From Heteronotia binoei (lineage: Eukaryota), in NCBI RefSeq assembly GCF_032191835.1, contig NC_083232.1, forward strand, positions 97,154,001 through 97,209,226: a stretch of DNA of 55,226 bases. The letters are read 5' to 3'. The notes below the pieces were generated by a model that was not told where the DNA came from, did no database searches, and worked only from the letters and a program-made list of their open reading frames with translations. The translations under genes and the position numbers were made by a program. Positions 987-52,630 of this stretch are shown here, piece by piece (position 1 is the first letter of the stretch; each line of letters begins with the position of its first letter).

Positions 987-1067
987 GTAAGTTGTTTGGG
1001 ATAATCCTTACTGGTGTGGTAGATTGCCTCACAACAGAACAGTTGTTGTAGGAGTGGATGATGGTAT

Positions 1068-2388: not shown

Positions 2389-3795
2389 GACCAAAGATTG
2401 AGTCCAGTGGCACCTTTAAGACCAACCAAGTCTTATTCTGGGCATAAGCTTTCGTGTGCATGCACATTTCTTCGGATACATTGAAACAGAAGTTATCAGC
2501 CATTAAATATCAGTAGAAGGTGTGAAAGTGTTGCCAGGAAGGGCTAATTAGAGTCAAGATGCAGAAGTGACTGAGCAATAAATATAGCTAAGACTGGATG
2601 AAAGCAACTGGTAAGACCAGTGAGAGCCAGTTTGGTGTAGTGGTTAGGTGTGCGGACTCTTCTCTTGGAGAACCGGGTTCAATTCCCCACTCCTCCACTT
2701 GCAGCTGCTGGAATGGCCTTGGGTCAGGCATAGCTCTCGCAGAGCTGTCCTTGAAAGGGCAGCTGCTGTGAGAGCTCTCTCAGCCCCACCCACCTCACAG
2801 GGTGTCTGTTGTGGGGGAGGAAGATAAAGGAGATTGTGACCACTCTGAGACTCTGAGTATAGGGCGGGATATAAATCCAATATCATCATCATCTTCTTCT
2901 TCTTCAGCTCTCCTCAAAACAGCATCATCAGTAACTTACAATCTCTAGTCTACTGGATAATTAAAGTTCTCTTTCACAAGTACTGGAGGCAAACCTTTTC
3001 TTGCCCATAGAACCCCCCCCCCCAGTCTTAAACAATTCCTCACCCACAATAATACATCTAATCTGAACATAGACATTGGTACCAGAACTTGCAATAAACC
3101 CAGATGCGAACTTTTCTGCCACATACACCCAGACAACATAACCACTGGACCTATCAGCATCAACTACGCCATCTCAGGCTTATTCTCTTGCTCTCCTTCT
3201 AACACTGTGTATGCCACTGAATGCCAGCAATGCCCTTCAGTTCTCCACACAGGGCAAATAGGTCAAACCCTACACCAAAGGATAAATGAGCACAAATTTG
3301 ATATCAAGAATCACAAAACTGAGAAACCTATAGGAGAACACTTCCAGGACATTCAGTGGGTGACCTCAAAGTAGCTGTTTTATTACAAAGGAATTTCAGA
3401 AATAGACTAGAATGGAAGACTGCTGAGTTACGGGTTATTACAATACTCAGGACAGTGGAACCCCCAGGACTTAACAGAGATATCAGTTTCTTATCTCACT
3501 ACACATGCTAATGTCATTCAGCTCACACATCTGTAAACGCCTGTATTATGCTGTATGCTAATTTGCTGCTATTCACAGATCTTACCAATTGCCTTCATCC
3601 AGTCGTAGCTATATTTACTGCCCAGTTACTTATGCATCTGAGCTCTAATTAGCCCTTCCTGGCAATACACTCCCCTGCATCTACCTATTGGTAATTGTTG
3701 GTGATTTCTGGTTCACTGTATCTGAAGAAGTGTAAAAGCTTATACCCAGAATAAAACTTTGTTGGTCTTAAAGGTGCCACTGGACTCAAACTTTG
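2389..3795 (+). mobile_element. Penelope-like retroelement remnant with GIY-YIG endonuclease and inverted pLTR ends
   Basis: Hand translation of ~3120-3510: SNTVYATECQQCPSVLHTGQIGQTLHQRINEHKFDIKN...PPGLNRD (one frameshift near 3345). ~2395-2495 is an inverted repeat of ~3705-3795. A SINE interrupts it at 2622-2905. Confidence 0.8.
2622..2905 (+). mobile_element. Squam3-like SINE (tRNA head, L2-like tail)
   Basis: GAGAGCCAGTTTGGTGTAGTGGTT A-box head, GGTTCAATTCCC B-box, GGGCGGGATATAAAT end, (CTT)n tail. More than 12 copies in the window. Confidence 0.9.
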
Positions 3796-4392
3796 TTCCC
3801 CTCAGTACAGGGTCTACTGTAAGCTCCAGGAGGATTGGCTACATCAGGGGGTGTGGCCTACTCAGGTTTGGATCTGCATGGTTTTGAGGAGGGGCAAAAT
3901 CAAAAAATGATGCCCCCTTACGGGCCATTCTATCTTATGGTCCCATAGAATACAATGGACTCCATACCCAATTTGGCGCCCTCCCCCCTCTATCAGTGCC
4001 CGGAGCGAGCACCCCCCTCTGCTCACCCCTAGATTCGGCCCTGGGTCTACTATGCAAAGGAGTTCCTGCTACAAAAAAAGTCCTGCTGGTAGTGGCGGAA
4101 ACTGCCAAGTTGCAGCTGACTTATGTTAACCCCATAGGATTTTCGAGGCAAGAGAAGTTCCAGTGTGGTTTGCCATTGCCTGCCTCTGCATATTCCTTGG
4201 TATTCTCCTGCCCAAGTACTAACCAGGGTTGACTCTACTTAGTTTCTGATAACTATGCTGGGATAACTGAGGGGATTGTGGTTTACTTCCCTCTCCACAG
4301 CTGCTCTCATTCTTTAAAGGTTTATCTTGATTTGATCATACTGTTCTAACCAATGAACCAATCAAGAAAATCAAGAAATAGCATGACCTCCA

Positions 4393-5576: not shown

Positions 5577-6222
5577 CCCATTGAAAACCCCTCTGAAAGT
5601 GCTGGATGTCTCTAACTGCTCCTTAAACCATGCCGACATGGCATATTTAGCCAACAGTCTTCATTCTAACCACCTGGAAGTTCTAGATCTCAGCGGACAT
5701 GATGTGACAGACCTTTACCCATCCACCTTCTTCAAACTTCTGAACCACTCGTCTCACACACTGAAGAGCCTCACCCTCGAGGAGTGCAACATTCAAGACA
5801 TCCACGTCAACATGCTGGTTTTGGGACTGGTCCCCTGCCGGAAGCTGGAGGAACTGAAGTTCCTCGGAAATCCTCTATCTTCTCGAGGGCTGAAGTGCCT
5901 TTTCAATATTTTCGTTGACTTTCTTAGGCTGAAATATATTGAATTCCCAGTTCCGAAAGACTGTTATCCAAACGACATCAGTTACCCAATTAATGAAGCC
6001 GATCTTTCGAAATTTGATCGCCAGAAATATGAGAGGATAGCGGAAGACCTTCACATGATTTTGCTGGAGGCAAAGCGTGACGACATCAAGGCTTCCACGC
6101 CGCTCTTTGGCAGCTACGATGCAGCAGTGCAGGAAACGGGGAATGAACTGGGATCCTTTTTGCTGAAGTCCTTCAGAGACGCCCTAGAGAGCTTCAGTAG
6201 GGCACTCCAGGAAATTAACTGA
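5577..6222 (+). CDS. LRRC14B: LRRC14B coding exon 2 (LRR repeats, stop)
   Basis: Polypyrimidine tract and TTTCAG| acceptor at 5576/5577. AG+C rebuilds a Ser codon, giving SPLKTPLKVLDVSNCSL. LRR motifs LxxLDLS/LxxLxLxxN. TGA at 6220-6222. Joined CDS is 905+646=1551 nt, 516 aa. Confidence 0.93.
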
Positions 6223-6629: not shown

Positions 6630-6775
6630 NNNNNNNNNNNNNNNNNNNNNNNNNNNNNNNNNNNNNNNNNNNNNNNNNNNNNNNNNNNNNNNNNNNNNNN
6701 NNNNNNNNNNNNNNNNNNNNNNNNNNNNNNNNNNNNNNNNNNNNNNNNNNNNNNNNNNNNNNNNNNNNNNNNNNN
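6630..6775. other. Assembly gap (146 N)
   Basis: N run starting inside a SINE 3' end. Confidence 1.
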
Positions 6776-8457
6776 GCTTTCCAGTAATTTCTCAGTCTAA
6801 TACATCTATCCCTCTATCCTCATGAAGCTGTTTTTAACCCCAATCTGTAAACAAAATGGAGGTACCTCTGACATGCCTAGTAGCAGTTTGGAAATGTAAT
6901 TTAGATTGTAGAAATCATGCTGTGAGGAGACACCCTCTCTCCAGTGCTACTCTCCAGAACCTATTTGGTGTATCTCTCCTTTAAATAAATATGTTGGAAG
7001 AATCGATCAGAGATGTCCTACATTGCATCTGGTTTGGTTTATCTAGCTATCGGCATTTCTTATGAAGGGTCACTTTATATAAATATTGGATTTATAGATT
7101 CAGGTGGTCTATAGGATCAGGTAGGTAGCCATGTTGGTCTGAAGCAGAAGACCAAAGCTGGATTCCAGGGGCAACTTTGAGACCGACGCATTCTGAGTAT
7201 TAGCTTTTGTGAGTTTTGTTTTGTTGCATTCATCGCTCAGTGGTTTAACCCAGGGCCAGTGGTGTTCTGTCTTGGGGTGTAGGACAACTGCTGGGGATGG
7301 CCCTAAAATTGCACTTAAAAAAACCAACAGAGGAAGTATGTGCTGTACATCTGGGGAGAGGGGAGGCATGAAATTAAAAGAATTAAATTTAACAGGAGGG
7401 GTGGCAAAGGTTAATTAAAGAGTAGGCCGTTGCTGCAGGAGAAAGGAAGAGAGAGAATCACAGTTGGATTTCATTGGCTTTTAATTGTAATTCTCTATTT
7501 TCTTTGCCAGTATTCCTGCCCTTGAATGTTGCAGGGGTCAGTGCCCACCCTGTCAAGAATGGGAATAATGTCACCCTTTCAGTGTAACCCTTGTTGGCAA
7601 ACAAAGGCCTGGTCCCACTACTGTCTCTCTGGTCACAGAACAGTTGTTGCACACACCGTTCATACCTAAAACAACTTTTATTTAAGGGTGGGGAAAGGAA
7701 ATAGGAACAGGGAGCGTGATATCTTTGCTTACGGCATTTTTAAGCCTCCTTTCTCTTAAAAAGCATTTAATCAGACTTTCGACTGAAATGTTGTTAGCAG
7801 TAACCCAGTCAGGTCTTTTTTTTATTATCAGAAACATACAGGAAAGCAGTTCCAGCTGGCTTGGCCTCAGGGGATGTGGCCTAACATGCAAATGAGTTCC
7901 TGCTGGAATGCAAAAGAAGCCCTGACCCCAGTAATGTATAGACTAGTCCCAAAGTCAGTGCAAGGAATGAAATATATCTCCTTAGTCTCTGGGGTCAAAT
8001 GAGAAGGAGCTGGAAGCTCTCTTTGGATTTTGGCAGGTGAGCATAAGTCTCTTGCTGTAGAAGAGTCATTGTCAATGTGGGATGCTTACAGAAGTCTCCT
8101 TTCTGTCACAGTGATAGAAGTTCCACTGGAGTTGAAGAACTAAAGTGCCCCAACTCCAAAATGGCTGCTCTTCTACTCACCAGCTTCTTAACCACTCCCA
8201 GGGTTTCCAGCCTCTAGTTTGGGGCATGGAGATCGCTCAGGATTACAGATGATCTTTAAATGACATAAATCAGTTTCCCTGGAGAAAATGGCTGCTTTGG
8301 AGGGTGGACTCTGTAACTCTGCTGGGGTCTCTCTTCTCTCCAGGCAGTTCCCCCAAATCTCCAGGAATTTACCAGCCCAGAGCTTGCAACCTTAATATTG
8401 TTTTTTCCTCAGGGACAATGGTATTTCTCCAGTAGAAAGCCCAGCCTCTCTAGATAG

Positions 8458-9686: not shown

Positions 9687-10196
9687 TAGGGTTGCCAAGC
9701 CCAATTTAAGAAATATCTGGGGACTTTGGGGGTGGAGCCAGGAGACTCTGGGGGTGGAGCCAAGATCAAGGCTGTGACAAGCATCATTGAACTCCAAAGG
9801 GAGTTCTGGCCATCACATTTAAAGGGACGGCACACCTTTTCAATGCCTTCCTTCTGTAGGAAATAATGAAGGATAGGGGCACCTTCTTTTGGGGCTCATA
9901 GGATTGGACCCCCTGGTCCAATCGTTTTGAAACTTGGAGGGGCATTTTGGGGCGAGGCACTAGATACTATACTAAAATGTTGGTGCCTCTACCCCAAAAA
10001 ACAGCCCCCCCAGAGCCCCAGATACCCGCGGATCAATTCTCCATGATTTTCTATGGGAATAAATCTCCACAGGGAACAACAGAGTTCCCAGCAGACATTT
10101 CCCTCCCCTCCCCCCCGCTTTCTGATGACCCTGAAGTGGGGGGAGGGCCTCCAAACTGGGGGATCCCCTGCCCCCACCTGGGGATTGGCAACCCTA
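9687..10196. mobile_element. hAT-type MITE, 510 bp
   Basis: TIR TAGGGTTGCCAA...TTGGCAACCCTA, perfect 8-bp TSD ATCTAAAC (9679-9686, 10197-10204). Confidence 0.9.
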
Positions 10197-25127: not shown

Positions 25128-28100
25128 ATATAGTGTAGAATATCGACATAGCAGCTCTCAGTGAGGTCCGTTTCCCTGAGGAAGGTAGTCTTCAAGAACA
25201 CGGTGCTGGCTATACCCTCTACTGGTCGGGTAAGTCAAAGGCTGAGAGCCGCCTTTCTGGTGTTGGCTTCATGGTCAGGAACTCCATTGCCTCCAAACTT
25301 GAAAACCTGCCAACAGGTCACTCAGATCGCATCATGTCCATGCGCCTCCCACTTCAAAACAAGCAGCATGCAACACTGTTCAGTGTGTATGGCCCAACCC
25401 TTCAAGCAGATCCTGCAGAAAAGAACAAGTTCTATGCTGATCTACGCAACCTCGTACGGAAGACCCCTACAGAGGACAAGGTGATCATCCTTGGCGACTT
25501 CAATGCCAGAGTAGGTAAAGACTCGGAAGCCTGGAAAGGAGTACTTGGCAAACACGGCATTGGCAACTGCAATGACAACGGGCGCCTCCTGCTAGAATTC
25601 TGCATGGAGCACCAGCTCACCATCACCAACACTATCTTCCAGCAGAAGAACAGTCTGAAGACAACCTGGATGCACCCACGGTCCAAGCATTGGCACCTTA
25701 TCGACTACATTCTGGTGCGCCAGAGAGACCTTCGAGATGTCTTACACACCCGAGTAATGCCCAGCGCAGAATGTCATACGGATCATCGTCTTGTACGCTG
25801 CAATCTCCGTCTTCACTTTAAACCCACACCCAGGAGAGGAGGTATCCCTCGGAGGAAGTTTCAGGTTGGCAGCCTCCAGTCAGCCGAAGTTAAAGCTGCC
25901 TTCCAGGCAAAACTCCAGTCAAGAATTGAGGACCCCAGTTGCCCCACAGACCCTTCTCCAGAAGCACTCTGGGAACACCTAAAAACTACCGTCCTGCAGA
26001 TCTCTGAAGAAGTCCTCGGGTTCTCCACAAGGAAGAACAAGGACTGGTTTGATGAGAACAATCAAGAGATCCAAGAATTACTGGCAAAAAAGAGATCTGC
26101 CTACCAAGCACATCTTGCTCAGCCCTCCTGTCCTGGGAAAAAAGCAACCTTTCGCGCTGCATGTAGCAACCTCCAGCGCAAGCTTCGAGACATTCAGAAC
26201 GAGTGGTGGACCAAGCTTGCAGAGAGAACCCAGCTGTGTGCAGACACTGGTGATTTAAGAGGGTTCTACGAAGCCCTGAAGGCAGTATATGGTCCATCAT
26301 ATCAGGCTCAGAGTCCCTTGCATAGTGCAGACGGCCAAGTGCTCCTCACAGACAAGGCATCCATACTGAACCGGTGGTCGGAGTATTTTCAGGTTCTCTT
26401 CAGTGCCAACCGCGTAGTTCAAGATTCAGCAATCCACCTCACCCCACTTCAACCGGTGAAAACAGAGTTGGATGAGATCCCCACCCTAGAAGAGACTGTT
26501 AAAGCCATCAAGCAACTGAAAAGTGGCAAGGCAGCGGGAGTTGATGGAATTCCACCAGAGATCTGGAAGCATGGGGGCACAGTACTACATAGCTCACTTC
26601 ACAAAGTACTTGTCACCTGCTGGGAACAAGGCAAATTACCACAGGACTTTCGCGATGCAATCATCATCACCCTATACAAGAACAAAGGGGAAAAGTCAGA
26701 CTGCTCCAACTACCGGGGGATAACCCTGCTCTCCATCGCAGGCAAAATCCTTGCCAGAATACTCCTGAACAGACTGGTGCCCACCATTGCAGAAGAACTC
26801 CTCCCAGAGAGCCAGTGCGGCTTCAGAGCTAACAGGAGCACCACTGACATGGTATTTGTTCTCAGGCAGCTCCAAGAGAAATGCAGGGAACAGAACAAGG
26901 CTCTGTATGTGACTTTTGTCGACCTTACCAAAGCTTTCGATACCGTTAGCAGGAAAGGCCTGTGGCAAATCTTGGAACGTTTAGGATGTCCCCCAAGGTT
27001 CCTCAGCATGATCATCCAGCTACACGAAGACCAGCGAGGCCAAGTCAGACACTGCAACGACCTCTCGGAGCCCTTCCCAATAGGCACAGGTGTAAAGCAA
27101 GGCTGCGTTCTCGCGCCAACTCTCTTTACGATCTTCTTTAGCATGATGCTCCAAAGAGCCGCAGTAGATCTAGATGATGACGATGGTGTATACATCCACT
27201 ATCGCACCGATGGCAGCCTGTTCAACCTGAGGCGACTAAAGGCCCACTCCAAGACAATGGAAAAACTCATCCGAGAGCTACTGTTTGCTGATGATGCTGC
27301 ACTCGTCTCCCACTCGGCATCAGCTCTGCAGCATATGACGTCCTGCTTTACAGAGGCTGCCAAGCTATTCGGCCTAGAAGTTAGTCTGAAGAAGACAGAA
27401 GTTCTCCACCAGCCTGCACCCCAGGAAGATTATCACCCTCCCTGCATCACTGTGGGTGAATCAGTTCTGAAGACAGTCCAGCAGTTCAGCTACCTGGGGT
27501 GCATCATCTCCTCAGATGCCAAGATCGACAAGGAGATTGACAACAGGCTGGCAAAGGCAAACCGTGCCTTTGGCCGACTGCACAAAAGAGTGTGGAGCAA
27601 CAAGCATCTGAAAAAAGGCACAAAGATCAATGTTTACAAAGCGGTTGTGATGACAACCCTCATCTACGGCTCCGAATCGTGGGTTTTATACCGTCATCAC
27701 CTGCGACTCCTTGAGCGCTTTCATCAGCGCTGCCTTCGCACCATCCTCAACATCCACTGGAGTGACTTTGTGACCAACACTGAAGTCCTCAAGAGGGCGG
27801 AGGTTACCAGCATCGAGGCACTGCTGTTGAAGACGCAGCTGCGCTGGGCAGGGCATATTTCTAGGATGGAAAACCACCGCCTTCCCAAGATTGCCCTGTA
27901 TGGCGAACTCTCCACCGGCCATCGAAATAGAGGGGCACCAAAGAAGAGGTACAAGGACTCCTTGAAGAAATCCCTTAGCACCTGTCACATCAACCATCAC
28001 CAGTGGTCTGACCTAGCCTCAGATCGCAAAGCATGGAGGCACACCATCCACCAGGCTGTCTCTTCCTTTGAGAACGCACGCATAGCTGGTCTTGAGGACA

Positions 28101-28284
28101 AAAGGAGATTGAGGAAGAATCGCACTGCTACAGGACCAACCCTAAATCAGACTTTTCCCTGCAGCCGCTGTGGCCGGACCTGCCTGTCCCACATTGGTCT
28201 TGTCAGCCACCAGCGAGCCTGCAGCAAACGTGGGCTATTGCACCCTTCTTAAATCTTCGTTCGCGAAGCCAAGCCGAGAGAGAG
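25128..28284 (+). mobile_element. 5'-truncated RTE-clade LINE
   Basis: TSD AGTGTAGA (25120-25127, 28285-28292), ~25-nt 3' UTR and (GA)n tail. Confidence 0.93.
25142..28252 (+). CDS. RTE ORF: APE endonuclease, reverse transcriptase, C-terminal Zn-finger-like motif (N-terminus truncated)
   Basis: Open from IDIAALSEVR (25142) through GDFNAR, TDHRLV, QCGFR, DLTKAFD, GVKQG, LFADD to CSRCGRTCLSHIGLVSHQRAC. No stop or frameshift in 1036 codons. Confidence 0.9.
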   Translation: MDIAALSEVRFPEEGSLQEHGAGYTLYWSGKSKAESRLSGVGFMVRNSIASKLENLPTGHSDRIMSMRLPLQNKQHATLFSVYGPTLQADPAEKNKFYADLRNLVRKTPTEDKVIILGDFNARVGKDSEAWKGVLGKHGIGNCNDNGRLLLEFCMEHQLTITNTIFQQKNSLKTTWMHPRSKHWHLIDYILVRQRDLRDVLHTRVMPSAECHTDHRLVRCNLRLHFKPTPRRGGIPRRKFQVGSLQSAEVKAAFQAKLQSRIEDPSCPTDPSPEALWEHLKTTVLQISEEVLGFSTRKNKDWFDENNQEIQELLAKKRSAYQAHLAQPSCPGKKATFRAACSNLQRKLRDIQNEWWTKLAERTQLCADTGDLRGFYEALKAVYGPSYQAQSPLHSADGQVLLTDKASILNRWSEYFQVLFSANRVVQDSAIHLTPLQPVKTELDEIPTLEETVKAIKQLKSGKAAGVDGIPPEIWKHGGTVLHSSLHKVLVTCWEQGKLPQDFRDAIIITLYKNKGEKSDCSNYRGITLLSIAGKILARILLNRLVPTIAEELLPESQCGFRANRSTTDMVFVLRQLQEKCREQNKALYVTFVDLTKAFDTVSRKGLWQILERLGCPPRFLSMIIQLHEDQRGQVRHCNDLSEPFPIGTGVKQGCVLAPTLFTIFFSMMLQRAAVDLDDDDGVYIHYRTDGSLFNLRRLKAHSKTMEKLIRELLFADDAALVSHSASALQHMTSCFTEAAKLFGLEVSLKKTEVLHQPAPQEDYHPPCITVGESVLKTVQQFSYLGCIISSDAKIDKEIDNRLAKANRAFGRLHKRVWSNKHLKKGTKINVYKAVVMTTLIYGSESWVLYRHHLRLLERFHQRCLRTILNIHWSDFVTNTEVLKRAEVTSIEALLLKTQLRWAGHISRMENHRLPKIALYGELSTGHRNRGAPKKRYKDSLKKSLSTCHINHHQWSDLASDRKAWRHTIHQAVSSFENARIAGLEDKRRLRKNRTATGPTLNQTFPCSRCGRTCLSHIGLVSHQRACSKRGLLHPS

Positions 28285-35123: not shown

Positions 35124-35794
35124 CTAATTTCCCAACAAGGCCTTCTCCACCCTCTTGAACTTCTTAAGTTCTACAGACAATTCCCAGTATCGGAGGTACA
35201 GCCACATCAGCCTTCCATTCCGACGTTTATTGGTGTTTAGCAAGTTGCTGCAATAGGTATCGTGCCTAAAGATATCTTTCAAGCCCATCTCCATGCCCAA
35301 GTCCAAAGCAATTGGATCAGTTGCTGCTCTAATTAGCAAATTTTTCTCAATTTCCAGTCGCCGGTTTCTGGGAAGCATGAGGCTGCAGTAGATCTCCTGC
35401 CTTTCGGTGAGAGTTTCTTCAAACTCCTTGAGCAAAGCGCCAGCTCTCTTTTGCCACTCTGCTTCTTTCTCCAGACAGCTCTGGTACAAAGCGCCAGCGG
35501 CCCCAGAATGCTGCAGGATCTTTCTTTCTTGTTCCAGCTGGGCATGCTCTTTTTCCAGGGTTCTTCTTTCCTCCACCAATTTACGGCTCTGGGAGACAAG
35601 GGCTTCACGGTAACTTGACGTTCTGTTCCGTTCTTTTTCCAGTTCTAGCTCTAAGTGGGCAACCGAACGGCGATTTTCAATAATTATGTCACGGTATTTC
35701 GATTCAAGCTCTCTTTGTACTGTTGACAGTTTTTGATAGAACTTTTTCCTTTCATTTTCTATCTCCTTCTGCGACTCTCTGGACCAGATCCATC
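35124..35794 (-). CDS. CCDC127: Coiled-coil domain-containing protein 127, last coding exon
   Basis: Acceptor TTGCAG|GA at 35795/35794. Reads (R)WIWSRESQKEIENERKKF...LTERQEIYCSLMLPR...NGRLMWLYLRYWELSVELKKFKRVEKALLGN*. Frame stays open upstream of the ORF-track start. Confidence 0.95.
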
Positions 35795-37195
35795 CTGCAA
35801 TTCATGAGACATAATCCACATGTAAAATTAAATGAAAAACAAACTTCTCATGATAATACTGATACATCATACACAAAGATAGTTTCAGAGGGCAGCTATG
35901 TTGATCTACGGTAGAACAGCTAGCTTTGCATCCAGGAGCACCTTAGAGACCAACAAATTTCTGGGGTATGAACTTCTGAGAGTCAAAGCTCCCTTCATCG
36001 GATCTAGCTCTCACAAATCAGTACCTTCAAAACCTCCTTTATCAAGAAATACAGTCACTTGTTTGAGATAGTTGCTGGCATGAGCCCAGATTCACTAGAA
36101 TATCTGAAGGACTGCTGCGACAGAACAAGTACAGAAGTGTACCATAAAGGTTCAGCAATCAATCAAAACTGTTTTGAATTACTCAATAAGATATATGGTG
36201 GGAAAAGTCAAGGTCTGATGTGGGAGTCTGTTGGAAGAAATTCGATTTTAAAGGCTGAGACTGACATGTTAATCTTAACAGGAGTGTGAATTAGAGATTT
36301 ATGGAAGATATCAGAGCTTTGGTTCAACTTACCTGGGGTATTATAAGAGGCCCTGGAGTGTAATTCAGTTCTGGCAGAGTGCCCTGTTGATGTTATAAAC
36401 CTGTCTGAGTTTTCCTGGCACGTTTTGTTTCAATCTTAACATCCCACAACTCCTTCCTCAATTGTGTACGTTTTACTGAATTTTTGTTGTTCATTGTAAA
36501 AAGAAACCATCTTGTCACTGTCAATTTTACCTCCGTTATCCATTCAGGAGTAGGTGGGTTATGCTCAGGCCTAGATCTTATTCCTCAAACTCAGTTTTCT
36601 CTCTTCTGCCCATTGGGAACCCTGGTGTGGTGGGGTTGGCTGGCAATTGTGACGTGGAGAGATGATCCTGTGAAGTGGCGTTTAGCTCCCAAGGAATCCA
36701 TCACAACCGCCTTGCCCTGTATTGATCTGCCTGCTGACGGGTCAATTCTTCCTCTCCTAAGGGCACCTTCTTTCTGGGAGGCTCAGTTTCTGTTACAGCT
36801 TCAGCCTTCTGTGTGGTAGTACCCACTCTGTGGAATAACTTTCTAGAGATGTGATAAGTGCCTTCTCCAGTTAGGGTCTAGAAATTGTGTAAGGCTGAAC
36901 ACTTTAGGCTTCGGACTGCTTGCTGTGTTTTTCCACCACGCTGTTCAGGCAACATTGCTCAGGGATTTCTGATCTGTTTAAACATTATGCCATTTTATGT
37001 TTGACAATACCTTATGTGCTTTCTGCAAGTCATCTTAAGCACAAATAAAGGTGGGATATAATTGAAGGAACAAACATTTCTATAGAGTTGCTGGATTAAA
37101 CAAATTGAGGCCTACTGGTGCAAATCCCTACCAAGTTAGTACATTCGATAAATTGTAAGATAATGAGAAACTCTTTTATTCCAAATATGACTTAC

Positions 37196-37316
37196 GGAAG
37201 GCAGCCAGTCCCAGCATTGGAACCAACAAGGCATAATTCCATTTGCTGCCATGGCCTCCATCGTCCCGGGCATTAGGGTGGATGTTCCAACTGGGAGGCT
37301 CATTTAAATTATTCAT
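37196..37316 (-). CDS. CCDC127: CCDC127 first coding exon (121 nt)
   Basis: Translated by hand (missing from the ORF track): MNNLNEPPSWNIHPNARDDGGHGSKWNYALLVPMLGLAAF+C, donor C|GTAAGT at 37196/37195. Phase 1 matches the GA start of the next exon. Likely acceptor GAAG| at 37325/37324. Total CDS is 792 nt, 263 aa. Confidence 0.95.
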
Positions 37317-39047
37317 CGACAAACCTTCAAATTAGGAGAAAAGAACTCTTAGGTATCCAATAAATTGGCTGTAAAAGACACAATTACATGTATAGTTTGG
37401 TATTATGACTCCAATGCCATGAAAACCCAGAAATAGGGTCACCAAGTAGTGGGAATTTGTGTGGAAAGGTTGCCGTAAAGATAGGCTATGTAACTGAGTG
37501 TTATATGTTATAACCACAGAAACACTATCCTCTGATTCTCTTGGCCCCTGCTTTCTCCATCTCTCCTTCCTTCAAGTGTCTTTCTTGTGGCCCGATGCCC
37601 GATCTACCTTCTTCCCTTTGTTACTACTCTGTTCCTGTCCCTTTAAACCAACTCCTTCCTCCTTTAATTGACCTTCCTTTCTCACATTCTCATTCACTTC
37701 TAGCCAATCCACACAGATGCTTCTCTTAACACATTTTTGTGAAAATAATCATGGCCACAGGCATGGGTAGAAAGAGAGGATTGATCTACTGGCTGCAGAT
37801 GTTACCAAAGTGTTCATGTCTGAATATTTATTTGAGATTCTTCTCACTGATTTCTAGGAGTAAGAGGCATTCAAAGGACTTTTTCTCAAATACATCGGTA
37901 TATAAAAAACCTGGGCCCCCAACACACAGCTTGCCACCTTCGCCTTCATCTCATTTTTGCAATGGCACCTCCTCTACCAGAAATAGGAAAAGAAGGCTAT
38001 CATACACTAGAGAGAGAGAGAGAGACTACATAGCCACCTTTATTTGCAATTGCAATATTTTTGAATATTCATTGCAATATGTTAAATAAGCATGAAAGTC
38101 AAAGAAATGAAAGGTAATGAGGAGAGGGGCTTACCTGCAATTCTTCAAGAGTACAGCAAAATTTGGTCACTCCAAAAAGAAGAGAAGCGTCTTGATCAAA
38201 GCCATCCTAGAATTAAAGCATCTTAACATTTTAATATTACGTTAAATTAATCCACCATTGCATTATTTTTGGAAGCAATAATAAAATATTATAACACTGA
38301 AGTTTGAATTCATTTCAATGAAAAGCCCACAAGCTTTTCACATGCTATCAAATACGAGAGATCCGAGTCTCAAACAAACCATTTGAAACATTTAAAATTT
38401 TAACATATAGAAACTTCTTGTTTGCATGGCTGTAGCATATGATAAAAATACAATCAAATAATATTAGAATCAGAAATGGTCATATGTGATTAACCACAAC
38501 TCTTGTCCTTAAGTACATTTTCACCAAGTTGGCATTTGTAGCATTTTAAGAAAGGCAAGTTATACAACTCAGAGTTGCTACGAAGTCCAGGTGCTAGGTT
38601 ACCATGGCCCCTAGAAATTTCATTGCCACGCCTAGTATTTTCAACATAGGCAAGCCTTTCCTTTCTTAGCTCGGTAGTTGTCTTTCTGCCTTGTTGTAAT
38701 TAAAGGGATTCTGCTCACTTTAGAAAGCTTCATAAAGTTTCTAGGGTCAGGGCATAGATATTCATGTCCTGAAAAGGCATAAATATGTAACTTTCCTACT
38801 GCATTATGGAACCTCAAGTAAGAGAAGCTGGAGCCCTGAAGACATATATATCATAAGAATGGGTTCATGGAGATCCTAGTGATCATATTTATGAATTAAC
38901 GTCTAGATCCTACTTGATATATGTAACAGCAGTTCTGTGCATCTTCAAACATGGGATTTTATATCCAAGTTAGCTTTTTCTTGTTGTGAAGGGAACTAGA
39001 CTACCCTTATAATTTATACAATACAACATCATGCTGTTAATAAAATT

Positions 39048-39326
39048 GAGAGCCAGTTTGGTGTAGTGGTTAAGTGTGTGGACTCTTATCTGGGAGAACT
39101 GGGTTTTTTGATTCCCCACTCCTCCACTTGCACCTGCTGAAACGGCCTTGGGTCAGCTGTAGCTCTGGCAGAGGTTGTCCTTGAAAGGGCATCTGCTGTG
39201 AGAGCCCTCTCCAGCCCCACCCACCTCACAGGGTGTCTGTTGTGGGGGAGGAAGGGAAAGGAGATTGTGAGCCGCTCTGAGACTCTTCGGAGTGGAGGGC
39301 GGGATATAAATCCAATATCTTCTTCT
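39048..39326 (+). mobile_element. Squam3-like SINE in CCDC127 intron 1
   Basis: Family match with intact tail. Confidence 0.9.
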
Positions 39327-40139
39327 AATATTACAAAAAAAACACACCCTATGATGAGATCAGGGTTAATTTTGTGGTAGTAATAATCAGAATATTAAAA
39401 TGCAGAACCCTGAAGCTTGAAAAATGACCAGTCTGTCTGCTAAATTTCTGGGCTGGTTCATAATCAAAGAAAAGTTGTCACAGCTTGACGAAGAGGAGGA
39501 GGGAACGTTCATGAAATAACTAGGGCAACTTCCATCTTGACATCAATAGATTCTGAAGTATTTCTTCTGAAAAGAGTCACTTTTGATCACCCAAAATAGG
39601 CATGAATGGATCATATCATAACCCACGCATTTGCTTAGATTCTCACTAGAGATAATCTGTACAGTGAGAGATGTAGCACAAGGTCACTTCACCCTATTGG
39701 ACCAGGAGGCTTTCTTCTCACATGACAGCTCATCACTTGGCAGTTTGGAGGATGCATTTAAAGTTGCTTTCTTTCCACCACCACCACCCCACTCCGCATC
39801 TATTTGCCTTCCTTCCTTCCGGTTCTCAACCATCTGACGTTCATGTCTTGTGGCTCTCAAACATCTGAAATTTATTCAATGTGGCTCTTAGGTTAAGCAA
39901 GTTTGGCTACCCCTGCTCATAACAATCCTGCGAGGTAGGCCAAGGAGAAGAAAGCAACCGGGCCAAGGTCAGGTGGAGACTTTTGCATGGCTGACTGTAA
40001 ACAGATGCCCTGCAAAACCTTCCCTGAGGAGACCCGCCAGGTTTTGCGATGCCTTTGCAACACCCTCTCCCTGCTCCCCTTTGGCCCTCCAGCGGGGCCC
40101 CAGGCACTGAGGGTGAAGGAACCGCCTGGGCTGTACCCA

Positions 40140-40640
40140 GGATTTTTTTTGTAGAACAAGCCCAGCAGGAACTTATTTGCATTCTAGGCCACACCCCCTG
40201 ATGGCACCATTGTTCCACACAGGGGTTTTTTTTGTGGGGAAAAAACTCAGCTTGAACTCATTTGCATATTAGGCCACACCCCCTGATGGCACCATTGTTC
40301 CACAGGTTTTTCTTAGAAAACGCTCAGCAGGAACTCATTTGCATATTAGGCCACATCCCCCGATGGCACAATTGCTCCACACAGGGGGCTTTGTAGAAAA
40401 GGCCCAGCAGGAACTTATTTGCATAATAGGCCACACCCCCTGATGGTACCACTGTTCCACGCAAGGTTTTTTTTCCAGAAAAAGCTCAGCAGAAACTCAT
40501 TTGCATATTAGGTCACACCCCCTGATGGCACCATTGTTCCACGCAGGGAGCTTTTGTAGGAAAAAAGCTCAGAAGGAACTCATTTGCATATTAGGCCACA
40601 TCCCCTGGCACCAAGTCAGCCAGAACTGTGCTCCTGCTCA
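40140..40640. repeat. Tandem array of six ~80-bp units, each with ATTTGCAT
   Basis: Octamers start at 40175, 40260, 40337, 40417, 40499, 40582 (spacing 85, 77, 80, 82, 83). Confidence 0.95.
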
Positions 40641-40971
40641 AAAAAAGGCCCCGGCTGTACCACTCCGGACTGCGGGAGGGACTCAAGCAATTAGAGGCCC
40701 GAAAATCCTCACTCAGAAAGCGAGCACGTCAGAAAAGACGAGCCTAAAGGCCCGTTGTTCTTAACCTGCCAATGTCCCTGAAATGAAATTCTTTTTCTCC
40801 TGCATTATAGAGGAGAGAGGTCGTTTCATTCCCCACCCCCCCCGCTCTGAGTTGGTGCGGCCCAAGTCCAGCCCGGGCGCGGGGGAAGGGAGGGCTTCTC
40901 AGGGCCACTGACCGCTCCCTTTACGGCCCCGAAGCGAAGCGGCCCCCTCACGCGAGCAGGTTTCTCCTCAC

Positions 40972-41030
40972 CGGTAAGGACAAGGGCCGCGAGAACTTCT
41001 GAGGAAACGCTTCTCCCGCCGCCAAGTACG
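40972..41030 (-). other. CCDC127: Putative non-coding first exon of CCDC127
   Basis: Donor CCG|GTGAG at 40972/40971 inside the CpG island (alternative GTGAG donor near 40951). The 5' end is a guess. Confidence 0.45.
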
Positions 41031-41165
41031 CTTCATTGCGCCTGCGCGGACGCCCCTCTCCCGCGGGTGGGGCGGAGCGAGTCACTCCGTCATCCCGTCG
41101 GGGGAGGCGCCTCCTTCGCGCACGCGCAGTCTGCTGAGGGCCGACCCGCTGCCGGCAGGGGCGAA

Positions 41166-41219
41166 ATGGCGGCGGCTGTGAGGGGGTGGCGGCGGCGGCC
41201 TTGGCGGGCCCTTCGCTGG
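41166..41219 (+). CDS. SDHA: Succinate dehydrogenase flavoprotein subunit, exon 1 (mitochondrial targeting peptide)
   Basis: GAAATGG start context, MAAAVRGWRRRPWRALRW (Arg-rich, no acidic residues), donor TGG|GTAAGT, phase 0. Confidence 0.85.
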
Positions 41220-41529
41220 GTAAGTGCGCGAGCAGCCCTGGCAGCAGGGGACGGGGCCACCCTCTCCGGCGGGAGGAGCGAAGAGGCTCGGCCGAGGGAA
41301 CCGGGTCTCGCTTGCTCTCCTTCCGAAGGGCTCATTAGCTCCCCGCTTAGTTCTCACGACGCCCCCGTGAGGTAGGTCAGGCTCGCCCAAGGTCACGACT
41401 GCGCTTTGTGGTGGAGGGGGATTCGAACCCGCAGCTCTCCTCCTCGCGGCTGCAGACCTCCCTCGCCCGCCTCTTCCCTCCAAGGAGCTCAGGAGAGGCT
41501 GCTTCCACCCTCACAGCAACCCTGCGAGG

Positions 41530-41742
41530 GAGAAGAAGATATTGGATTTATACCCCGCCCTCCGCCCCGAATCTCAGAGCGGCTCACAATCTCCTTTCCC
41601 TTCCTCCCCCACAACAGACACCCTGTGAGGTGGGTGGGGCTGAGAGAGCTCTGACAAAAGCTGCCCTTTCAAGGACAACTCCTGCAAGAGCTATGGCTGA
41701 CCCAAGGCCATGCCAGCAGCTACAAGTGGAGGAGTGGGGAGG
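41530..41742 (-). mobile_element. Head-truncated Squam3-like SINE at the edge of the CpG island
   Basis: Reverse-complement family match. Confidence 0.8.
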
Positions 41743-42499
41743 TGAGGCCATTTCTGGCTGGCTGATAGAATTACCCTTGGTAGGAAATCTGTCATCTCCA
41801 TCTCTTCTGTAGGTAGATAATGCCATGAGTGAATACTTCCTTTTTAGGGGAGGGGGAGAATTCTCTGTATGTGGAAAGCTAAGTGTTGGGAAGAATTATT
41901 CTAGCAAAGCTTTTTTTTTGTGTCTTGCTATTTTTCTGTGTGAAGAATTTCCCCCCGTGGAGCAGCATTTACAGAATTGTCCTAAGCAGATCTACTCAAA
42001 ATCCACCTGAAGTCTACTCACTAGGGCTTACTCCCAGGAAAATGGTCTTAGGAATGTACTGTTAATCATGTAACTATCTTCTCTACAGTGGTACACATGG
42101 GTTTATATCCTTGTCAAGAATTGGGTCTGTATCTAGTTGGGTATGTGAGATGTCAGGTTCTTGTGCCAAGAAAAAGTACTCTTCTCATGCACCAGAGACC
42201 TAAGTTTGGTCTTCCTTGTGACATGCAAATGGTCAGGTAGTGAAGTTTATTTAGAGGCACATGAATATTGTACTACTCAAAACAGCTTTCACACAGTAGG
42301 TGTTCCTTCCGTTTCTGATAATCAGTGCAGAAGTGCAAATATTTATGGAGGAACTAATAGTAGCACGTGCCTGTGAAACTTAATCCTGACAATGCAGAAG
42401 TTCTCTGGGTTAGTAGAAAGGAAGACCAGGGGCTTGAGATAATCTCCTGTCTCGGATAGAGTTATACTCCTCTTGAAAAGGCAGGTTCACAGCTTGAGG

Positions 42500-43000
42500 G
42501 TGCTACTTGACACAGCAGTCTCCTTTGAAAACCATGTGCCTGGAATGTTTTTGCTCAGCTTTGACTGCTGCATCAGTTGCATCCGTTCTTGGGTGGGTCA
42601 GTCAGATCTAGCCACAGTGACCCATGCATTATTAGTTACATCCAGACTGGACTAGTACAGTGTGATCTAGTTCGGGCTACTTTTGAAGAGTGTTTAGAAG
42701 CTGCAGCTTGTTCAGAATCCTGTGGCTAGACTGCTGTCGGGGCCGACTACTGGAGGACATACAACCCCAATGCTGCAGCAATTTCACTGGCTGCCAGTCT
42801 GCTCCAGAGCCCAAGCCAAAATGTCGTTTTTGACCTTTAAAGCCCGACATGGCTCAGGAATGGCGTTATCTTCTCCTGTCCCACCAGTCGAAGCAGCTCT
42901 CTTGACGGGTACGCATGAAGGGGCTTTTTCAGTGGCAGCCCAACAGAGGTGGGCCTGGTTCCCTCATTTTCAGTCTTTAGGCAGCAGTAGAAGGTAGCCT
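42500..43000 (+). mobile_element. Old L2 RT fragment (others near 17240-17600 -, 50080-50350 +, 51150-51395 +)
   Basis: Degenerate SRLD...KLQLVQN..ARLL...HWLPV, similar to the C-terminus of the 44442-46685 ORF. Confidence 0.7.
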
Positions 43001-44229: not shown

Positions 44230-47200
44230 ATGTAATGTAATGTAAAATTTTATTTATATCCCGCCCTCCCCGCCGAAGCAGGCTCAGGGCGGCTAACAGC
44301 ATTTCAGGTAAACAATAGTAATAAAAACATTAAATTCACATTAAAATTCACATTAAAATCAGTCAATAATCAATAATTAATTAAAACATTCCTAAGTCAA
44401 CATTGGCGGTAAACGTTACTAATCTGGCGGTAAACATTAATTCAGTTATTGGTGAACGCCTGTTTGAAGAGGGCGGTCTTGCAGGCCCTGCGGAACTGGT
44501 CTAAGTTCCGCAGGGCCCGCACCTCCTCTGGGAGTTGGTTCCAGAGTTGTGGGGCCGCAACAGAAAAGGCCCGGGTGCGGGTGCTTTGAAGTTTAACTTC
44601 TTTTGGCCCAGGGATATTCAGTCTGCTTTTCCCCACTGACCTCAGTGCTCTCTGGGGCTCATATGGGGAGAGACGGTCCCTCAGGTAGGTCGGTCCTTGG
44701 CCATATAGGGCTTTAAAGGTTATGACCAGCACTTTGTACTGGATCCGGTATACGATTGGCAGCCAGTGCAGTCCGCGCAGCCCTGGCCGTATATGCTCCC
44801 ATCTTGGGAGACCAAGTAGCAGCCTGGCCGCCGCGTTCTGCACTAGCTGCAGCTCCCGGGTCCGGTACAGAGGCAGCCCCATGTAGAGAGCGTTACAGTA
44901 GTCCAATCTTGAGGTGACCGTCGCGTGGATCACCATTGCTAGGTCCTGACGCTCTAGGAAAGGGGCCAGCTGCCTCGCCCGCCTCAGGTGGAAGAAGGCT
45001 GATTTGGCAGTGGCTGTTATCTGGGCCTCCATTGATAATGAAGGCTCCAGTAAGACGCCCAGGCTCTTTACCCGCTGCGCCGTCTTCAGCGGCGCCTCGT
45101 CAAAGGCCGGGAGAGATATTTCCTTCCCCAGAGTGCCACGACCCACATGGAGAACCTCTGTCTTCGCTGGATTTAACTTCAGCCCACTCAGTCTAAGCCA
45201 CGTTGCAACAGCCCGCAAAGCCTGATCCAGGTTCCCCGGGGCGGAGGCGGGCCGGCCGTCCATTAGTAGATAGAGCTGGGTGTCATCTGCGTATTGATGG
45301 CAACCCAGCCCAAATCTCCGGGCAATCTGGGCGAGGGGGCGCATATAGATGTTGAATAACATCGGGGAGAGAACTGCTCCCTGGGGCACCCCACAGTCTA
45401 GTGTGCGCCTCTGGGATCGCTCACCCCCAATCGCCACCCTCTGTCCCCGACCCATGAGGAAGGAGGAAAGCCATTGTAAGGCTAGCCCCTCAACCCCTAT
45501 GTCGGCGAGGCGGTGGATCAGCAACCGATGGTCGACTGTATCAAACGCAGCCGACAGATCTAATAACATCAGTATTGCCGCACCGCCTCGATCCAGTTGC
45601 CGCTGGAGGTCGTCCACCAAGGCGACCAGGACCGTCTCCGTCCCGTGGCCCGGTCGGAAGCCAGACTGGCACGGGTCTAAGACAGAAGCGTCATCTAGAA
45701 ATCTCTGTAGCTGTAACGCCACTGCCCTCTCGATAATTTTACCTAAAAATGGTAAATTGGACACCGGTCGGTAGTTTGCCAATTCGGCCGGGTCTGCTGT
45801 AGGTTTTTTCAAGAGGGGCCGGACCAAGGCCTCTTTCAGAGGCGCTGGAAAATGCCCCTCTAAGAGGGATCTATTTATGATGTCCTGTAGAGGACATCTA
45901 AGCTCCCTCTGGCAGGATTTAATCAGCCAAGAGGGGCAAGGGTCCAAATCACATGTTGTTGGGCGAGCAGCAGAGAGAATTCCATCGACTTCCTCCAGGC
46001 TGAGTGGGTCGAAGTGGTCCAGTACTAAATCTGAAGACAGGCGCGGAGCCTCAGTTTCACTTACTGTGTCTAATGTGATAGGCAGGTCTTGGCGGAGCGA
46101 TGAGATTTTATCTGCAAAATATTTCGCAAATGCCTCACAGCCTATTTCTAATTCCCTAATATTTGGTTTGCCTTGTGGCAATGTTATAAGATCTCCAATT
46201 ACTCTAAACAATTGTGCTGGGCGCGATTTTGCAGATGCAATCTTGGCTGCGAAGTATTCTTTCTTTGCAGCCTTGACTGCCATCTCATAAGACCTCATAA
46301 GCGTTCTATAGGATGTTCTCGTCGCTTCGTCCCGAGTATGCCTCCACCGTCTCTCTAGTCGTCTGAGCCCTTGTTTCAGCTGGCGTAACTCCAAGGTATA
46401 CCATGGTGCCAGCCTCTTGCGAGGGCGCAGAGGGCGCCGAGGTGCAATTTCATCGATAGCCCTGGATAGCTGGCCCTGCCAGACTTCCACCAGGTCATCG
46501 AGAGAATTGCCAGTGGGCCAGGGATCCCTCAGGGCTGTTTGGAACCGTTCCGGGTCCATCAAGCCCCGGGGGCGAGCCAAAATAGGCTCTCCGCCCATAC
46601 AGGGTTGGGGCAACGTCTCCATACGGGCCTTAAGGGCTAGGTGGTCCGACCATGGAACCGCTTCAGCCGCGATATCGTTCACCAAAATCCCGGATGCAAA
46701 GATCAGGTCTAATGTGTGCCCGGCCTGATGCGTGGGAGTTGAGAGAGCCCCAGTGTCGCCATGGAAGACACTAGGTCCATCGCCTGAGTGGAGGCCGTGT
46801 CATCGGCATGGACATTGAAGTCACCCAGGACCATAAGCCCCGGGAACTCCAATGCCCAGCCCGCCACTGCCTCCAATAGTGATGGTAAGGCGCTGGCTGG
46901 TGCGTTGGGCGTACGGTACACCAGCCAGATCGCCAACCCCTCTCCAACATCCCACGTCAGGCCGGCACATTCAATGCCATCGATCCTTGGAGCCGGGAGA
47001 GCCCGAAAGGTGTAATCCTCCCGTATGAACAACGCTACCCCTCCCCCCCGCCCGTTATTCCGTGACTGGTGAAAGACCGAGTAGCCTGGGGGGGTCATCT
47101 GGGAGAGAGCTACTGTCTCTCCGTCCCGCACCCAGGTCTCGGTCACGCAAGCCAGGTCCACATCCTGTTGGAGTAGAAACTCCTTGAGGGTCGAGGTCTT

Positions 47201-47303
47201 GTTGTTAATAGACCTGGCGTTGCATAACACCAGTGACGGAGACGGGCATTTCCTCTTGGTCCCACTACCTACCACCGTTGGGATGGGAAGTAGACTAGAA
47301 GAA
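44230..47303 (-). mobile_element. L2-clade LINE, nearly complete ORF2 with one frameshift
   Basis: Endonuclease (CNARS, VTETW, GDFN; 46709-47275) and RT (QSGFR, DLSAAFD, GVPQG, YADD; 44442-46685). (CATTA)n tail on the element strand. TSD GGAGTA (44224-44229, 47304-47309). Confidence 0.93.
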
Positions 47304-50455: not shown

Positions 50456-50542
50456 GGGCCAGCGGCTTGCCAGATCCTTTCTCGTAACTTCCACTTCACA
50501 GTTTATGGAAAGAAAAGTGCATCCGCTAAAGTATCAGATTCA
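50456..50542 (+). CDS. SDHA: SDHA exon 2 (87 nt)
   Basis: CAG| acceptor, GPAACQILSRNFHFTVYGKKSASAKVSDS, donor |GTAAGT. Same length as human exon 2 as I recall it. Confidence 0.92.

Positions 50543-52372: not shown

Positions 52373-52630
<258 letters not shown>

What the first reader, a model, noticed from the sequence alone, without database searches (positions are those of the whole stretch)
40140..40640. Six-unit octamer/KLF/SOX motif array beside the CCDC127-SDHA bidirectional promoter
Seen: six ~80-bp tandem units lie in CCDC127 intron 1, about 350-900 bp from the shared promoter. ATTTGCAT is perfect in 6/6 units while the A/T-tract spacers vary in length and sequence. GGCCACACCC is perfect in units 1, 2 and 4 (one change in the others). 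CCATTGTTC is perfect in units 1, 2 and 5. A related single repeat at ~4040-4085 has ATGCAAAG instead of the octamer. Established: these strings are POU-octamer, KLF/CACCC and SOX consensus motifs, and homotypic clusters can act as enhancers. Inference: local amplification of a repeat fragment may have built a lineage-specific POU/KLF/SOX module next to a complex II gene. Caveat: the SOX and octamer sites are ~25 nt apart, so this is not the canonical adjacent Sox-Oct composite, and the motifs may simply be inherited from the parent repeat.
Basis: partly seen in the sequence, partly recalled or inferred. Interest (0 to 1): 0.7.

Follow-up and report, generated by a model that had tools for sequence, protein, structure and literature searches.

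The report
Transposon-borne octamer repeat array near SDHA
The six-unit motif array next to the gecko SDHA/CCDC127 promoter is real, but it is the inside of one small cut-and-paste transposon that landed there only in the Heteronotia lineage and brought its "binding motifs" with it, so it is an ordinary repeat insertion and not a demonstrated enhancer.

Summary
There are 5.7 tandem units of about 80 bp at 40145-40607, with ATTTGCAT perfect in all six, and they lie in CCDC127 intron 1 about 0.3-0.9 kb from the shared CpG-island promoter.

The array is not a locally built module:
- It fills a 516-bp element (40138-40653) that starts with CAGG plus a T-run and ends with an A-run plus GGCCCCG.
- A perfect 8-bp target-site duplication, GCTGTACC, flanks the element. 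This 8-mer occurs only at these two places in the window.
- The window is Heteronotia binoei, 100% identical to its public assembly.
- Gekko kuhli and G. japonicus have a clean empty site with a single copy of the 8-mer.
- Paroedura, Eublepharis and Sphaerodactylus also lack the element.

The octamer and CACCC strings belong to the repeat family:
- A single-unit copy at 7810-7924 carries them.
- A related Gekko element carries them too.
- Hundreds of RNA contigs from close relatives carry them, and some of these span two units at other loci.

The octamer's invariance is no more than chance gives (permutation P=0.54).

Best reading: a hAT-like MITE with internally multiplied head units, neutral until shown otherwise.

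The scan had already noted transposon-derived tandem arrays, and one "octamer minisatellite", elsewhere in this genome. I did not test whether those are the same family.

Interest is low.

The parts
40130..40137 (+). Left target-site duplication GCTGTACC
   Evidence: The 8-mer occurs only twice in the 55,226-bp window, and each copy abuts one end of the element. Gekko kuhli and G. japonicus have a single copy at the orthologous site.
40138..40653 (+). 516-bp non-autonomous hAT-like transposon (MITE) that holds the whole array. The 5' end is CAGGA plus a T-run plus GTAG. The 3' end is an A-run plus GGCCCCG.
   Evidence: Sequence read. In contigs from other loci the element ends with an A-run, G, then CCCTG, followed by unrelated flanks (loose ends at 40647). 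It is absent from five other gecko loci.
40138..40219 (+). Unit 1 (head CAGGA..., octamer 40175-40182, CACCC box 40187-40196, SOX-like 40207-40215)
   Evidence: Alignment A1; motif hits.
40220..40302 (+). Unit 2 (octamer 40260-40267, CACCC 40272-40281, SOX-like 40292-40300)
40303..40381 (+). Unit 3 (octamer 40337-40344; CACCC box with one change; SOX-like site with two changes)
40382..40461 (+). Unit 4 (octamer 40417-40424, CACCC 40429-40438, SOX-like site with one change)
40462..40543 (+). Unit 5 (octamer 40499-40506, CACCC with one change, SOX-like 40531-40539)
40544..40653 (+). Unit 6 fused to the family's normal 3' tail and right terminal repeat (octamer 40582-40589, CACCC with one change, no SOX-like site)
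   Evidence: The tail aligns with the 3' half of the single-unit copy at 7810-7924.
40654..40661 (+). Right target-site duplication GCTGTACC
7810..7924 (-). Single-unit copy of the same family (115 bp). It has a perfect octamer and GGCCACATCC, and is flanked by ACTGGGGT / ACTGGGTT at 7925-7932 and 7802-7809.
   Evidence: (nhmmer E=1.6e-11).
3780..4085 (-). Copy of a related family (CCTTTGCAT variant plus GGCCACACCC). It is split by a nested 181-bp MITE at 3863-4043, which has the 8-bp duplication AGTAGACC/AGTAGGCC.
40800..41600 (.). CpG island holding the head-to-head CCDC127 (minus) and SDHA (plus) starts. This is context only and not part of the element.
   Evidence: Composition. SDHA ORFs. 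RNA contigs and splice joint. The block is conserved in other geckos.

Best explanation
The array is the interior of one non-autonomous cut-and-paste transposon, most likely of the hAT superfamily (a MITE). It inserted into CCDC127 intron 1 in the Heteronotia lineage after that lineage split from Gekko.

The element consists of six head-to-tail copies of the family's 5' part. Each copy holds the terminal CAGGG/T-run head, the octamer, the CACCC box and about 20 further bases. The array is closed by the family's ordinary 3' tail and right terminal repeat.

The POU, KLF and SOX-like strings are part of the family consensus. The transposon carried them in. They were not assembled or kept at this promoter.

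Inferred steps:
- The multiplication happened in a master copy before this insertion, by slippage, unequal exchange or faulty gap repair.
- Because every unit keeps its own left-end motif, the transposase could use any of them. That would explain why family copies differ in unit number.
- At this locus the element is most likely neutral intronic DNA.
- If it has any effect on SDHA or CCDC127, that effect would be a young, Heteronotia-specific side effect of six Oct/KLF-type sites placed 0.3-0.9 kb from a CpG-island promoter.
For: **Shown: it is a transposon insertion.**
- A perfect 8-bp direct repeat, unique in the window, abuts both ends.
- G. kuhli (L012 8357-8364) and G. japonicus (L011 6534-6541) have a single copy of the 8-mer, with both flanks contiguous.
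- Paroedura, Eublepharis and Sphaerodactylus loci have no match to the element.
- The window is 100% identical to H. binoei assembly locus L010, and the CCDC127 exon matches at 222/222 residues.

**Shown: the motifs come from the family.**
- The single-unit copy at 7810-7924 has its own 7/8 duplication and carries the octamer and CACCC box.
- A related G. japonicus element has the same head, octamer and CACCC box.
- In Logan contigs of four runs from close relatives, array positions are hit by tens to more than 100 contigs per run.
- 14-25 contigs per run end with the canonical CCCTG and then run into unrelated flanks.
- Several contigs at about 80-87% identity span two units.
- One recurrent contig has a SINE inserted exactly in the unit junction (all).

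**Shown: no sign of selection.**
- The units are 82-92% alike.
- The octamer's invariance is not beyond chance.

**From the literature.** The features 8-bp duplication plus YARNG ends define lizard hAT families (PMC3014272). MITEs with internal tandem repeats are a described class (PMC3879986).
Against: - No genome-wide census was possible. How common multi-unit copies are in H. binoei rests only on short RNA-derived contigs from close relatives.
- The terminal inverted repeat is short and imperfect (about 13-14 nt). This copy's ends are mutated: CAGGA on the left, CGGGG on the reverse complement of the right end.
- No autonomous partner was found, so the hAT assignment rests on duplication length and end motif.
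- In-situ expansion after insertion is not strictly excluded.
- Neutrality is inferred from lack of conservation and from the family origin. There are no chromatin or expression data. Six perfect octamers this close to a promoter could still be bound.
Confidence: 0.8

Rival explanations
1. Local amplification. A single-unit MITE inserted here, and its 5' part was then multiplied in place by replication slippage or unequal exchange.
For: - The only other family copy in the window has one unit.
- Tandem expansion of transposon pieces is reported as common in gecko genomes (PMC10702118), and other notes of this scan say the same for this genome. I did not test those notes.
- The empty site shows insertion of the element, not the number of units it had on arrival.
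Against: - The array starts at the element's very first base, so every duplication would need a breakpoint exactly at the terminus.
- The same unit-to-unit junction (…ATTGTTTCACACAGGGC plus T-run) and two-unit stretches occur in contigs from other loci.
- The units differ by 8-18% while the 8-bp duplication is still perfect.
Confidence: 0.17
2. Co-opted regulatory module. The transposon-borne array of six Oct sites with CACCC and SOX-like sites now works as a Heteronotia-specific enhancer or modifier of the SDHA/CCDC127 bidirectional promoter.
For: - There are six perfect octamers and three perfect CACCC boxes within 516 bp, 0.3-0.9 kb from the CpG island.
- Nominally there are fewer changes in motif columns than in the other ungapped core columns: 6/153 against 19/190 cells, Fisher P=0.04. 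The test was post hoc.
- It is established knowledge that transposon-derived site clusters can act as enhancers.
Against: - Five other geckos run the same promoter pair without the array.
- The motifs are family consensus, not locus-specific gains.
- The permutation test shows no excess conservation of the octamer.
- KLF-like and SOX-like sites are mutated in half of the units.
- The SOX and Oct sites are about 25 nt apart, not adjacent.
- The family is abundant, so some copies near promoters are expected by chance.
Confidence: 0.08
3. Assembly artefact or chance similarity: the array is not real sequence.
For: None found. The only other copy of this locus available (L010) is the same assembly, so it is not independent.
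Against: - The units are diverged (82-92%), not collapsed or duplicated reads.
- The element has intact ends and a duplication that matches the empty site of two other species.
- Family contigs from independent runs match it.
Confidence: 0.01

Closest known systems
Non-autonomous hAT elements / MITEs of lizards (Novick et al., Anolis carolinensis, PMC3014272)
   Same: It has an 8-bp target-site duplication, ends of the YARNG type (family consensus CAGGG), a short terminal inverted repeat and no coding capacity. It is small, with many dispersed copies.
   Different: No autonomous partner or transposase match was found. This copy's own ends are mutated. The listed Anolis families have other terminal repeats. 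Here the element's 5' end is itself multiplied.
Tandem-repeat-containing MITEs (DTC84 of the clam Donax trunculus and pearl-type elements of oysters, PMC3879986)
   Same: It is a short mobile element whose body is an array of up to about 5-6 core repeats that vary in number between copies, held between end sequences.
   Different: In DTC84 the repeats sit in a central region between left and right cassettes, and the duplication is AA. Here each repeat includes the left terminal motif, the duplication is 8 bp, and the host is a vertebrate.
SINE-derived satellites of squamates (PMC10702118)
   Same: Pieces of an interspersed repeat are turned into short tandem arrays. These are especially diverse in geckos, and their units are about 80-90% alike.
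   Different: Those arrays derive from Squam SINEs (retroposons) and are not bounded by a transposon's inverted ends and 8-bp duplication. This unit is not SINE sequence.
Sox-Oct composite enhancers and octamer/CACCC promoter modules of vertebrate genes
   Same: It contains perfect ATTTGCAT, CCACACCC-type and CATTGTT strings, in several copies.
   Different: The SOX-like and Oct sites are about 25 nt apart, not adjacent. The module is not conserved at the locus. The strings come from a repeat consensus. No binding or activity data exist.

Membership tests
hAT-superfamily non-autonomous transposon (MITE) | 8-bp target-site duplication | tested here: met
   GCTGTACC lies on both sides and is unique in the window. 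Two Gekko species have a single copy at the empty site. The second copy at 7810-7924 has ACTGGGGT/ACTGGGTT.
hAT-superfamily non-autonomous transposon (MITE) | Terminal motif YARNG and short terminal inverted repeats | tested here: inconclusive
   The family consensus ends are CAGGG...CCCTG. This is seen in units 2, 4 and 6 (units 3 and 5 begin CAGGT and CAAGG), in the copy at 7810-7924, and in contig loose ends. This copy reads CAGGA and ...CCCCG. The inverted repeat is only about 13-14 nt and imperfect.
hAT-superfamily non-autonomous transposon (MITE) | Shares ends with an autonomous element that encodes a hAT transposase | not testable with these tools
   No H. binoei sequence beyond the window could be fetched. 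No hAT transposase ORF is in the window.
MITE (general) | Short, non-coding, with many dispersed copies in different flanks | tested here: met
   The elements are 516 bp and 115 bp and have no ORF of note. Tens to more than 100 contigs per run hit each position. 14-25 contigs per run leave the 3' end into unrelated sequence.
Tandem-repeat-containing MITE | Internal array of core repeats whose number varies between copies | tested here: met
   There are six units here and one at 7810-7924. Contigs skip 92-331 bp of the array, and other contigs span two units.
Conserved cis-regulatory module of the SDHA/CCDC127 promoter | Present at the orthologous position in related species | tested here: not met
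   It is absent from G. kuhli, G. japonicus, Paroedura picta, Eublepharis macularius and Sphaerodactylus townsendi. The promoter block and the exon 2 block do align in the two Gekko species, Paroedura and Eublepharis. In Sphaerodactylus only the exon 2 block aligned at the threshold used.
Conserved cis-regulatory module of the SDHA/CCDC127 promoter | Motif positions evolve more slowly than their surroundings | tested here: not met
   An invariant run of 8 columns is expected by chance (P=0.54). The nominal Fisher P of 0.03-0.04 was post hoc and treats related units as independent.
Canonical Sox-Oct composite element | SOX and octamer sites directly adjacent (0-3 bp) | tested here: not met
   The octamer ends at 40182 and the SOX-like site starts at 40207, about 24 nt away. 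The spacing is the same in the other units.
Functional enhancer (any kind) | Open chromatin, factor occupancy or reporter activity | not testable with these tools
   No chromatin data were available. RNA contigs only show that family copies occur inside transcripts.

The most novel reading that the evidence does not exclude
The family is a 'many-headed' hAT MITE. Each tandem unit keeps a usable left end, so the transposase can mobilise versions with different numbers of units. In this way the family has seeded ready-made octamer/CACCC arrays across the Heteronotia genome. The copy in CCDC127 intron 1 is bound by POU/KLF factors and measurably changes the output of the SDHA/CCDC127 promoter in this lineage only.
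Probability: 0.07. Interest if true: 0.5.

Novelty: new member of a known kind. Interest (0 to 1): 0.18.

Why it matters
Mainly as a caution and as a clean example. In a repeat-rich genome a striking homotypic motif array beside a promoter can be a single transposon insertion, and one orthologous empty site settles that.

The locus also offers a natural experiment with known polarity. Heteronotia has six Oct/CACCC units 0.3-0.9 kb from the promoter of a housekeeping respiratory-chain gene, and Gekko has none. The question of whether transposon-borne site arrays change nearby promoters could be tested here.

The head-multiplied build of the element is a small addition to the known link between MITEs and tandem repeats, in a vertebrate.

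Tried and rejected
**Searches for further family copies.**
- Exact-pattern scans found nothing related. The metagenome scan gave 0 hits. The viral scan gave 1 hit and the bacterial/archaeal scan gave 6, all of them 18-mer chance matches in bacterial or viral contigs.
- A full-text search for the core string in papers gave 0 hits.

**Attempts to obtain more H. binoei genome for a family census.**
- The large protein search with the LINE reverse-transcriptase ORF returned no Heteronotia proteins. In hindsight it was not worth its cost.
- The exact look-up of the intact LINE ORF2 was not on record.

**Other checks with no result.**
- The Rfam scan of 37000-42500 gave only chance-level hits, so no snRNA-type gene lies behind the octamers.
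- The ESM Atlas look-up of CCDC127 gave nothing usable.
- A higher-order repeat (trimer or dimer duplication) was considered. Pairwise unit identities of 0.82-0.92 show no clear pattern, so I make no such claim.
- The scan's own notes gave nothing by sequence or nearby place.

**Limits and rules.**
- Only one read-laying run was allowed, and all four runs were kept as contigs. Depth therefore cannot be read as copy number.
Exons were searched one at a time, by reference.
- The N stretch at 6630-6775 was left untouched.

Full report
**1. The observation**

Tandem Repeats Finder reports one array at 40145-40607, with period 80, 5.7 copies and 80% matches. It also reports the array with period 162 x 2.9.

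- ATTTGCAT occurs six times in the array.
- GGCCACACCC is perfect in units 1, 2 and 4 and one change off in units 3, 5 and 6.
- CCATTGTTC is perfect in units 1, 2 and 5.

The window holds 8 octamers against 2.65 expected, and 7 of them lie in copies of one repeat family.

The genomic setting is also right:
- A CpG island with 65-76% G+C spans about 40800-41600.
- SDHA runs rightwards from it. The exon 1 ORF has its ATG near 41166. Exon 2 lies near 50500. Exon 3, at 52394-52540, matches FAD_binding_2.
- CCDC127 runs leftwards. Its last exon, 35127-35801, matches CCDC127 proteins of all tetrapods.
- RNA contigs from four public runs join 37322 to 38133 with GT..AG on the minus strand. They also cover 40926-41076, which fits a non-coding exon 1.

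The array therefore lies in CCDC127 intron 1. The exon 1-exon 2 joint itself was not among the rows shown.

**2. What the array sits in**

Reading outwards from the array shows that it fills a bounded element, 40138-40653.
- The left end is CAGGA plus a T-run plus GTAG.
- The right end is an A-run plus GGCCCCG.
- Both ends abut the 8-mer GCTGTACC, which occurs nowhere else in the 55,226 bases.

Each of the six units begins with the same head as the element itself, CA[AG]G, a T-run, then G.AG (alignment A1). Unit 6 runs into a 3' tail that is not repeated.

A second family copy at 7810-7924 on the minus strand is 115 bp long.
- It has one head, one octamer, one GGCCACATCC and the same kind of tail.
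- It ends in an A-run plus GACCTG.
- It is flanked by ACTGGGGT/ACTGGGTT (nhmmer E=1.6e-11).

A copy of a related family at 4085-3780 on the minus strand has CCTTTGCAT plus GGCCACACCC. It is split by a nested 181-bp element with its own 8-bp duplication.

An 8-bp duplication and YARNG-type ends are the features used to define lizard hAT families (PMC3014272). The inverted repeat here is short and imperfect, and I could find no autonomous partner. I therefore give "hAT-like" at about 0.75.

**3. Orthologous loci**

The CCDC127 exon is identical (222/222 residues) to the Heteronotia binoei protein. Locus L010 from that species' assembly is 100% identical to window 36900-41500. The window is therefore H. 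binoei.

I fetched the CCDC127-SDHA loci of five other geckos: Paroedura picta, Eublepharis macularius, Gekko japonicus, G. kuhli and Sphaerodactylus townsendi.
- The exon 2 block aligns in all five. The promoter block aligns in the two Gekko species, Paroedura and Eublepharis, but not in Sphaerodactylus at the threshold used.
- The element aligns in none.
- In both Gekko species the alignment runs up to 40654 on one side and resumes at or below 40137 on the other.
- At that point both read ...GGAGT GGTACAGC C..., a single copy of the 8-mer on the opposite strand (L012 8357-8364, L011 6534-6541).

This is a textbook empty site. The whole 516 bp, array included, is a transposon insertion made in the Heteronotia lineage after its split from Gekko.

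The SINE at 39048-39326 is likewise missing from the G. kuhli site. This part of the intron has simply collected insertions.

**4. Where the motifs come from**

The octamer and CACCC box are present in three other places:
- the single-unit copy at 7810-7924;
- a related element in G. japonicus (L011 17196-17271), with the same CAGGGG...TTTTGTAG head, ATTTGCAT and CCACACCCC;
- the family as seen in Logan contigs of four runs from close relatives, whose CCDC127 exon differs from the window by only 2-3 letters in 128.

In those runs (all):
- Array positions are hit by tens to more than 100 distinct contigs per run.
- The "other letters" at the array's private changes give back the family consensus, for example CACACCCC at 40601 and ATATTAGG at 40426.
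- 14-25 contigs per run end in CCCTG after 40647 and then run into unrelated sequence.
- Several contigs at about 80-87% identity span two octamers, for example 40137-40277, 40219-40355 and 40468-40615.
- One recurrent contig has a SINE inserted exactly in the unit junction (...CACCATT | SINE | ATTGTTTCACACAGGGC plus T-run).

So both the motifs and the unit-to-unit junction are family properties seen at other loci.

Because all four runs are kept as contigs, depth is not copy number. I cannot say what share of copies is multi-unit.

**5. Is there any sign of selection on the motifs?**

In the ungapped 60-column core, 20 columns vary. The octamer is the longest invariant run (8 columns). A run that long arises in 54% of column permutations.

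The nominal Fisher tests were chosen after seeing the data and treat related units as independent. They give P=0.03 for the octamer against the rest and P=0.04 for all motifs against the rest.

The "variable spacers" are the T-runs and A-runs, which change length easily. The KLF-like and SOX-like sites carry changes in half of the units. The units are 82-92% alike, with no clear higher-order pattern.

**6. Mechanism**

Shown:
- The element is an insertion with an 8-bp duplication.
- It is lineage-specific.
- The motifs and the unit junction come from the family.

Inferred:
- The multiplication took place in a master copy before this insertion. The array starts at the element's first base, which in-place slippage would not be expected to hit. 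The same junction also occurs elsewhere.
- Because each unit keeps a left-end motif, use of alternative left ends could produce copies with fewer units.
- The copy here is neutral.

The enhancer idea is not excluded, since six perfect octamers lie 0.3-0.9 kb from a CpG island. Nothing supports it beyond the strings themselves, and five geckos run this promoter pair without the array.

**7. Comparison with known kinds, and novelty**

The element fits two described kinds: non-autonomous hAT elements of lizards (PMC3014272) and MITEs with internal tandem repeats (PMC3879986). It parallels the SINE-derived arrays described for geckos (PMC10702118).

The one unusual detail is that the repeated unit includes the left terminus. 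I found no description of this family: the string search gave nothing, and I had no access to Dfam or Repbase. I file it as a new member of a known kind.

Earlier notes of this scan report many hAT MITEs and transposon-derived minisatellites in this genome, and one "octamer-motif minisatellite". I used these as leads only and did not test them.

**8. Verdict**

Interest is low (0.18).

Noticed in passing
window 3863-4043 (minus), inside 3780-4085: A 181-bp MITE (CAGGGCCGAATCT...CCAAACCTG) is nested in a copy of the related CCTTTGCAT family. Its 8-bp duplication is AGTAGACC/AGTAGGCC, and it separates that copy's octamer-like site from its CACCC box.
   Followed up: partly
window 39048-39326 (+): A high-copy tRNA-headed SINE lies in CCDC127 intron 1. 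It is absent from the orthologous G. kuhli site (L012 about 9819-9825, flanks contiguous), so it is also a Heteronotia-lineage insertion. About ten further copies of this SINE lie in the window.
   Followed up: partly
joints: array positions 40282/40359/40521 joined to 39045-39067, and 39319 joined to 40145: Contigs from three runs join the octamer/CACCC module, via TGATATCACC, to the 5' start of that SINE. Another joins the SINE's 3' end, via ATTGTTTCACACAGGGC, to the next unit's T-run. This is either a SINE-split array copy at another locus or a composite subfamily.
   Followed up: no
window 25271-28252 (+): There is an uninterrupted 993-aa LINE ORF2 with endonuclease and reverse-transcriptase domains, running from ATG to stop. 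It may be a young or active LINE copy. It is not on record as a called gene.
   Followed up: partly
window 44442-47275 (minus): A second LINE copy lies in SDHA intron 1. It has a 747-aa RT ORF and, in a separate frame, a 188-aa endonuclease-like ORF. Its best named relatives are Podarcis and Anolis RT proteins at 60-67% identity.
   Followed up: partly
window 82-990 and 5581-6222 (+): Two large ORFs look like exons of a leucine-rich-repeat gene downstream of CCDC127. It is probably LRRC14B, by position and from memory of the human locus. Only the second ORF gave LRR Pfam hits.
   Followed up: partly
L011 (Gekko japonicus) 17196-17271: A related element has the same head, two octamer-like sites (ATTAGCAT and ATTTGCAT) and CCACACCCCCTGA. 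This shows that the motif module predates the Heteronotia family.
   Followed up: partly
window 39753-39915: A further dispersed repeat lies just upstream of the array. It is hit by more than 100 contigs per run at about 85% identity. The adjoining stretch 39918-40137 is orthologous to Gekko sequence. The repeat was not identified.
   Followed up: no
window 6630-6775: A run of 146 N (assembly gap or masked). It was left as it is.
   Followed up: no
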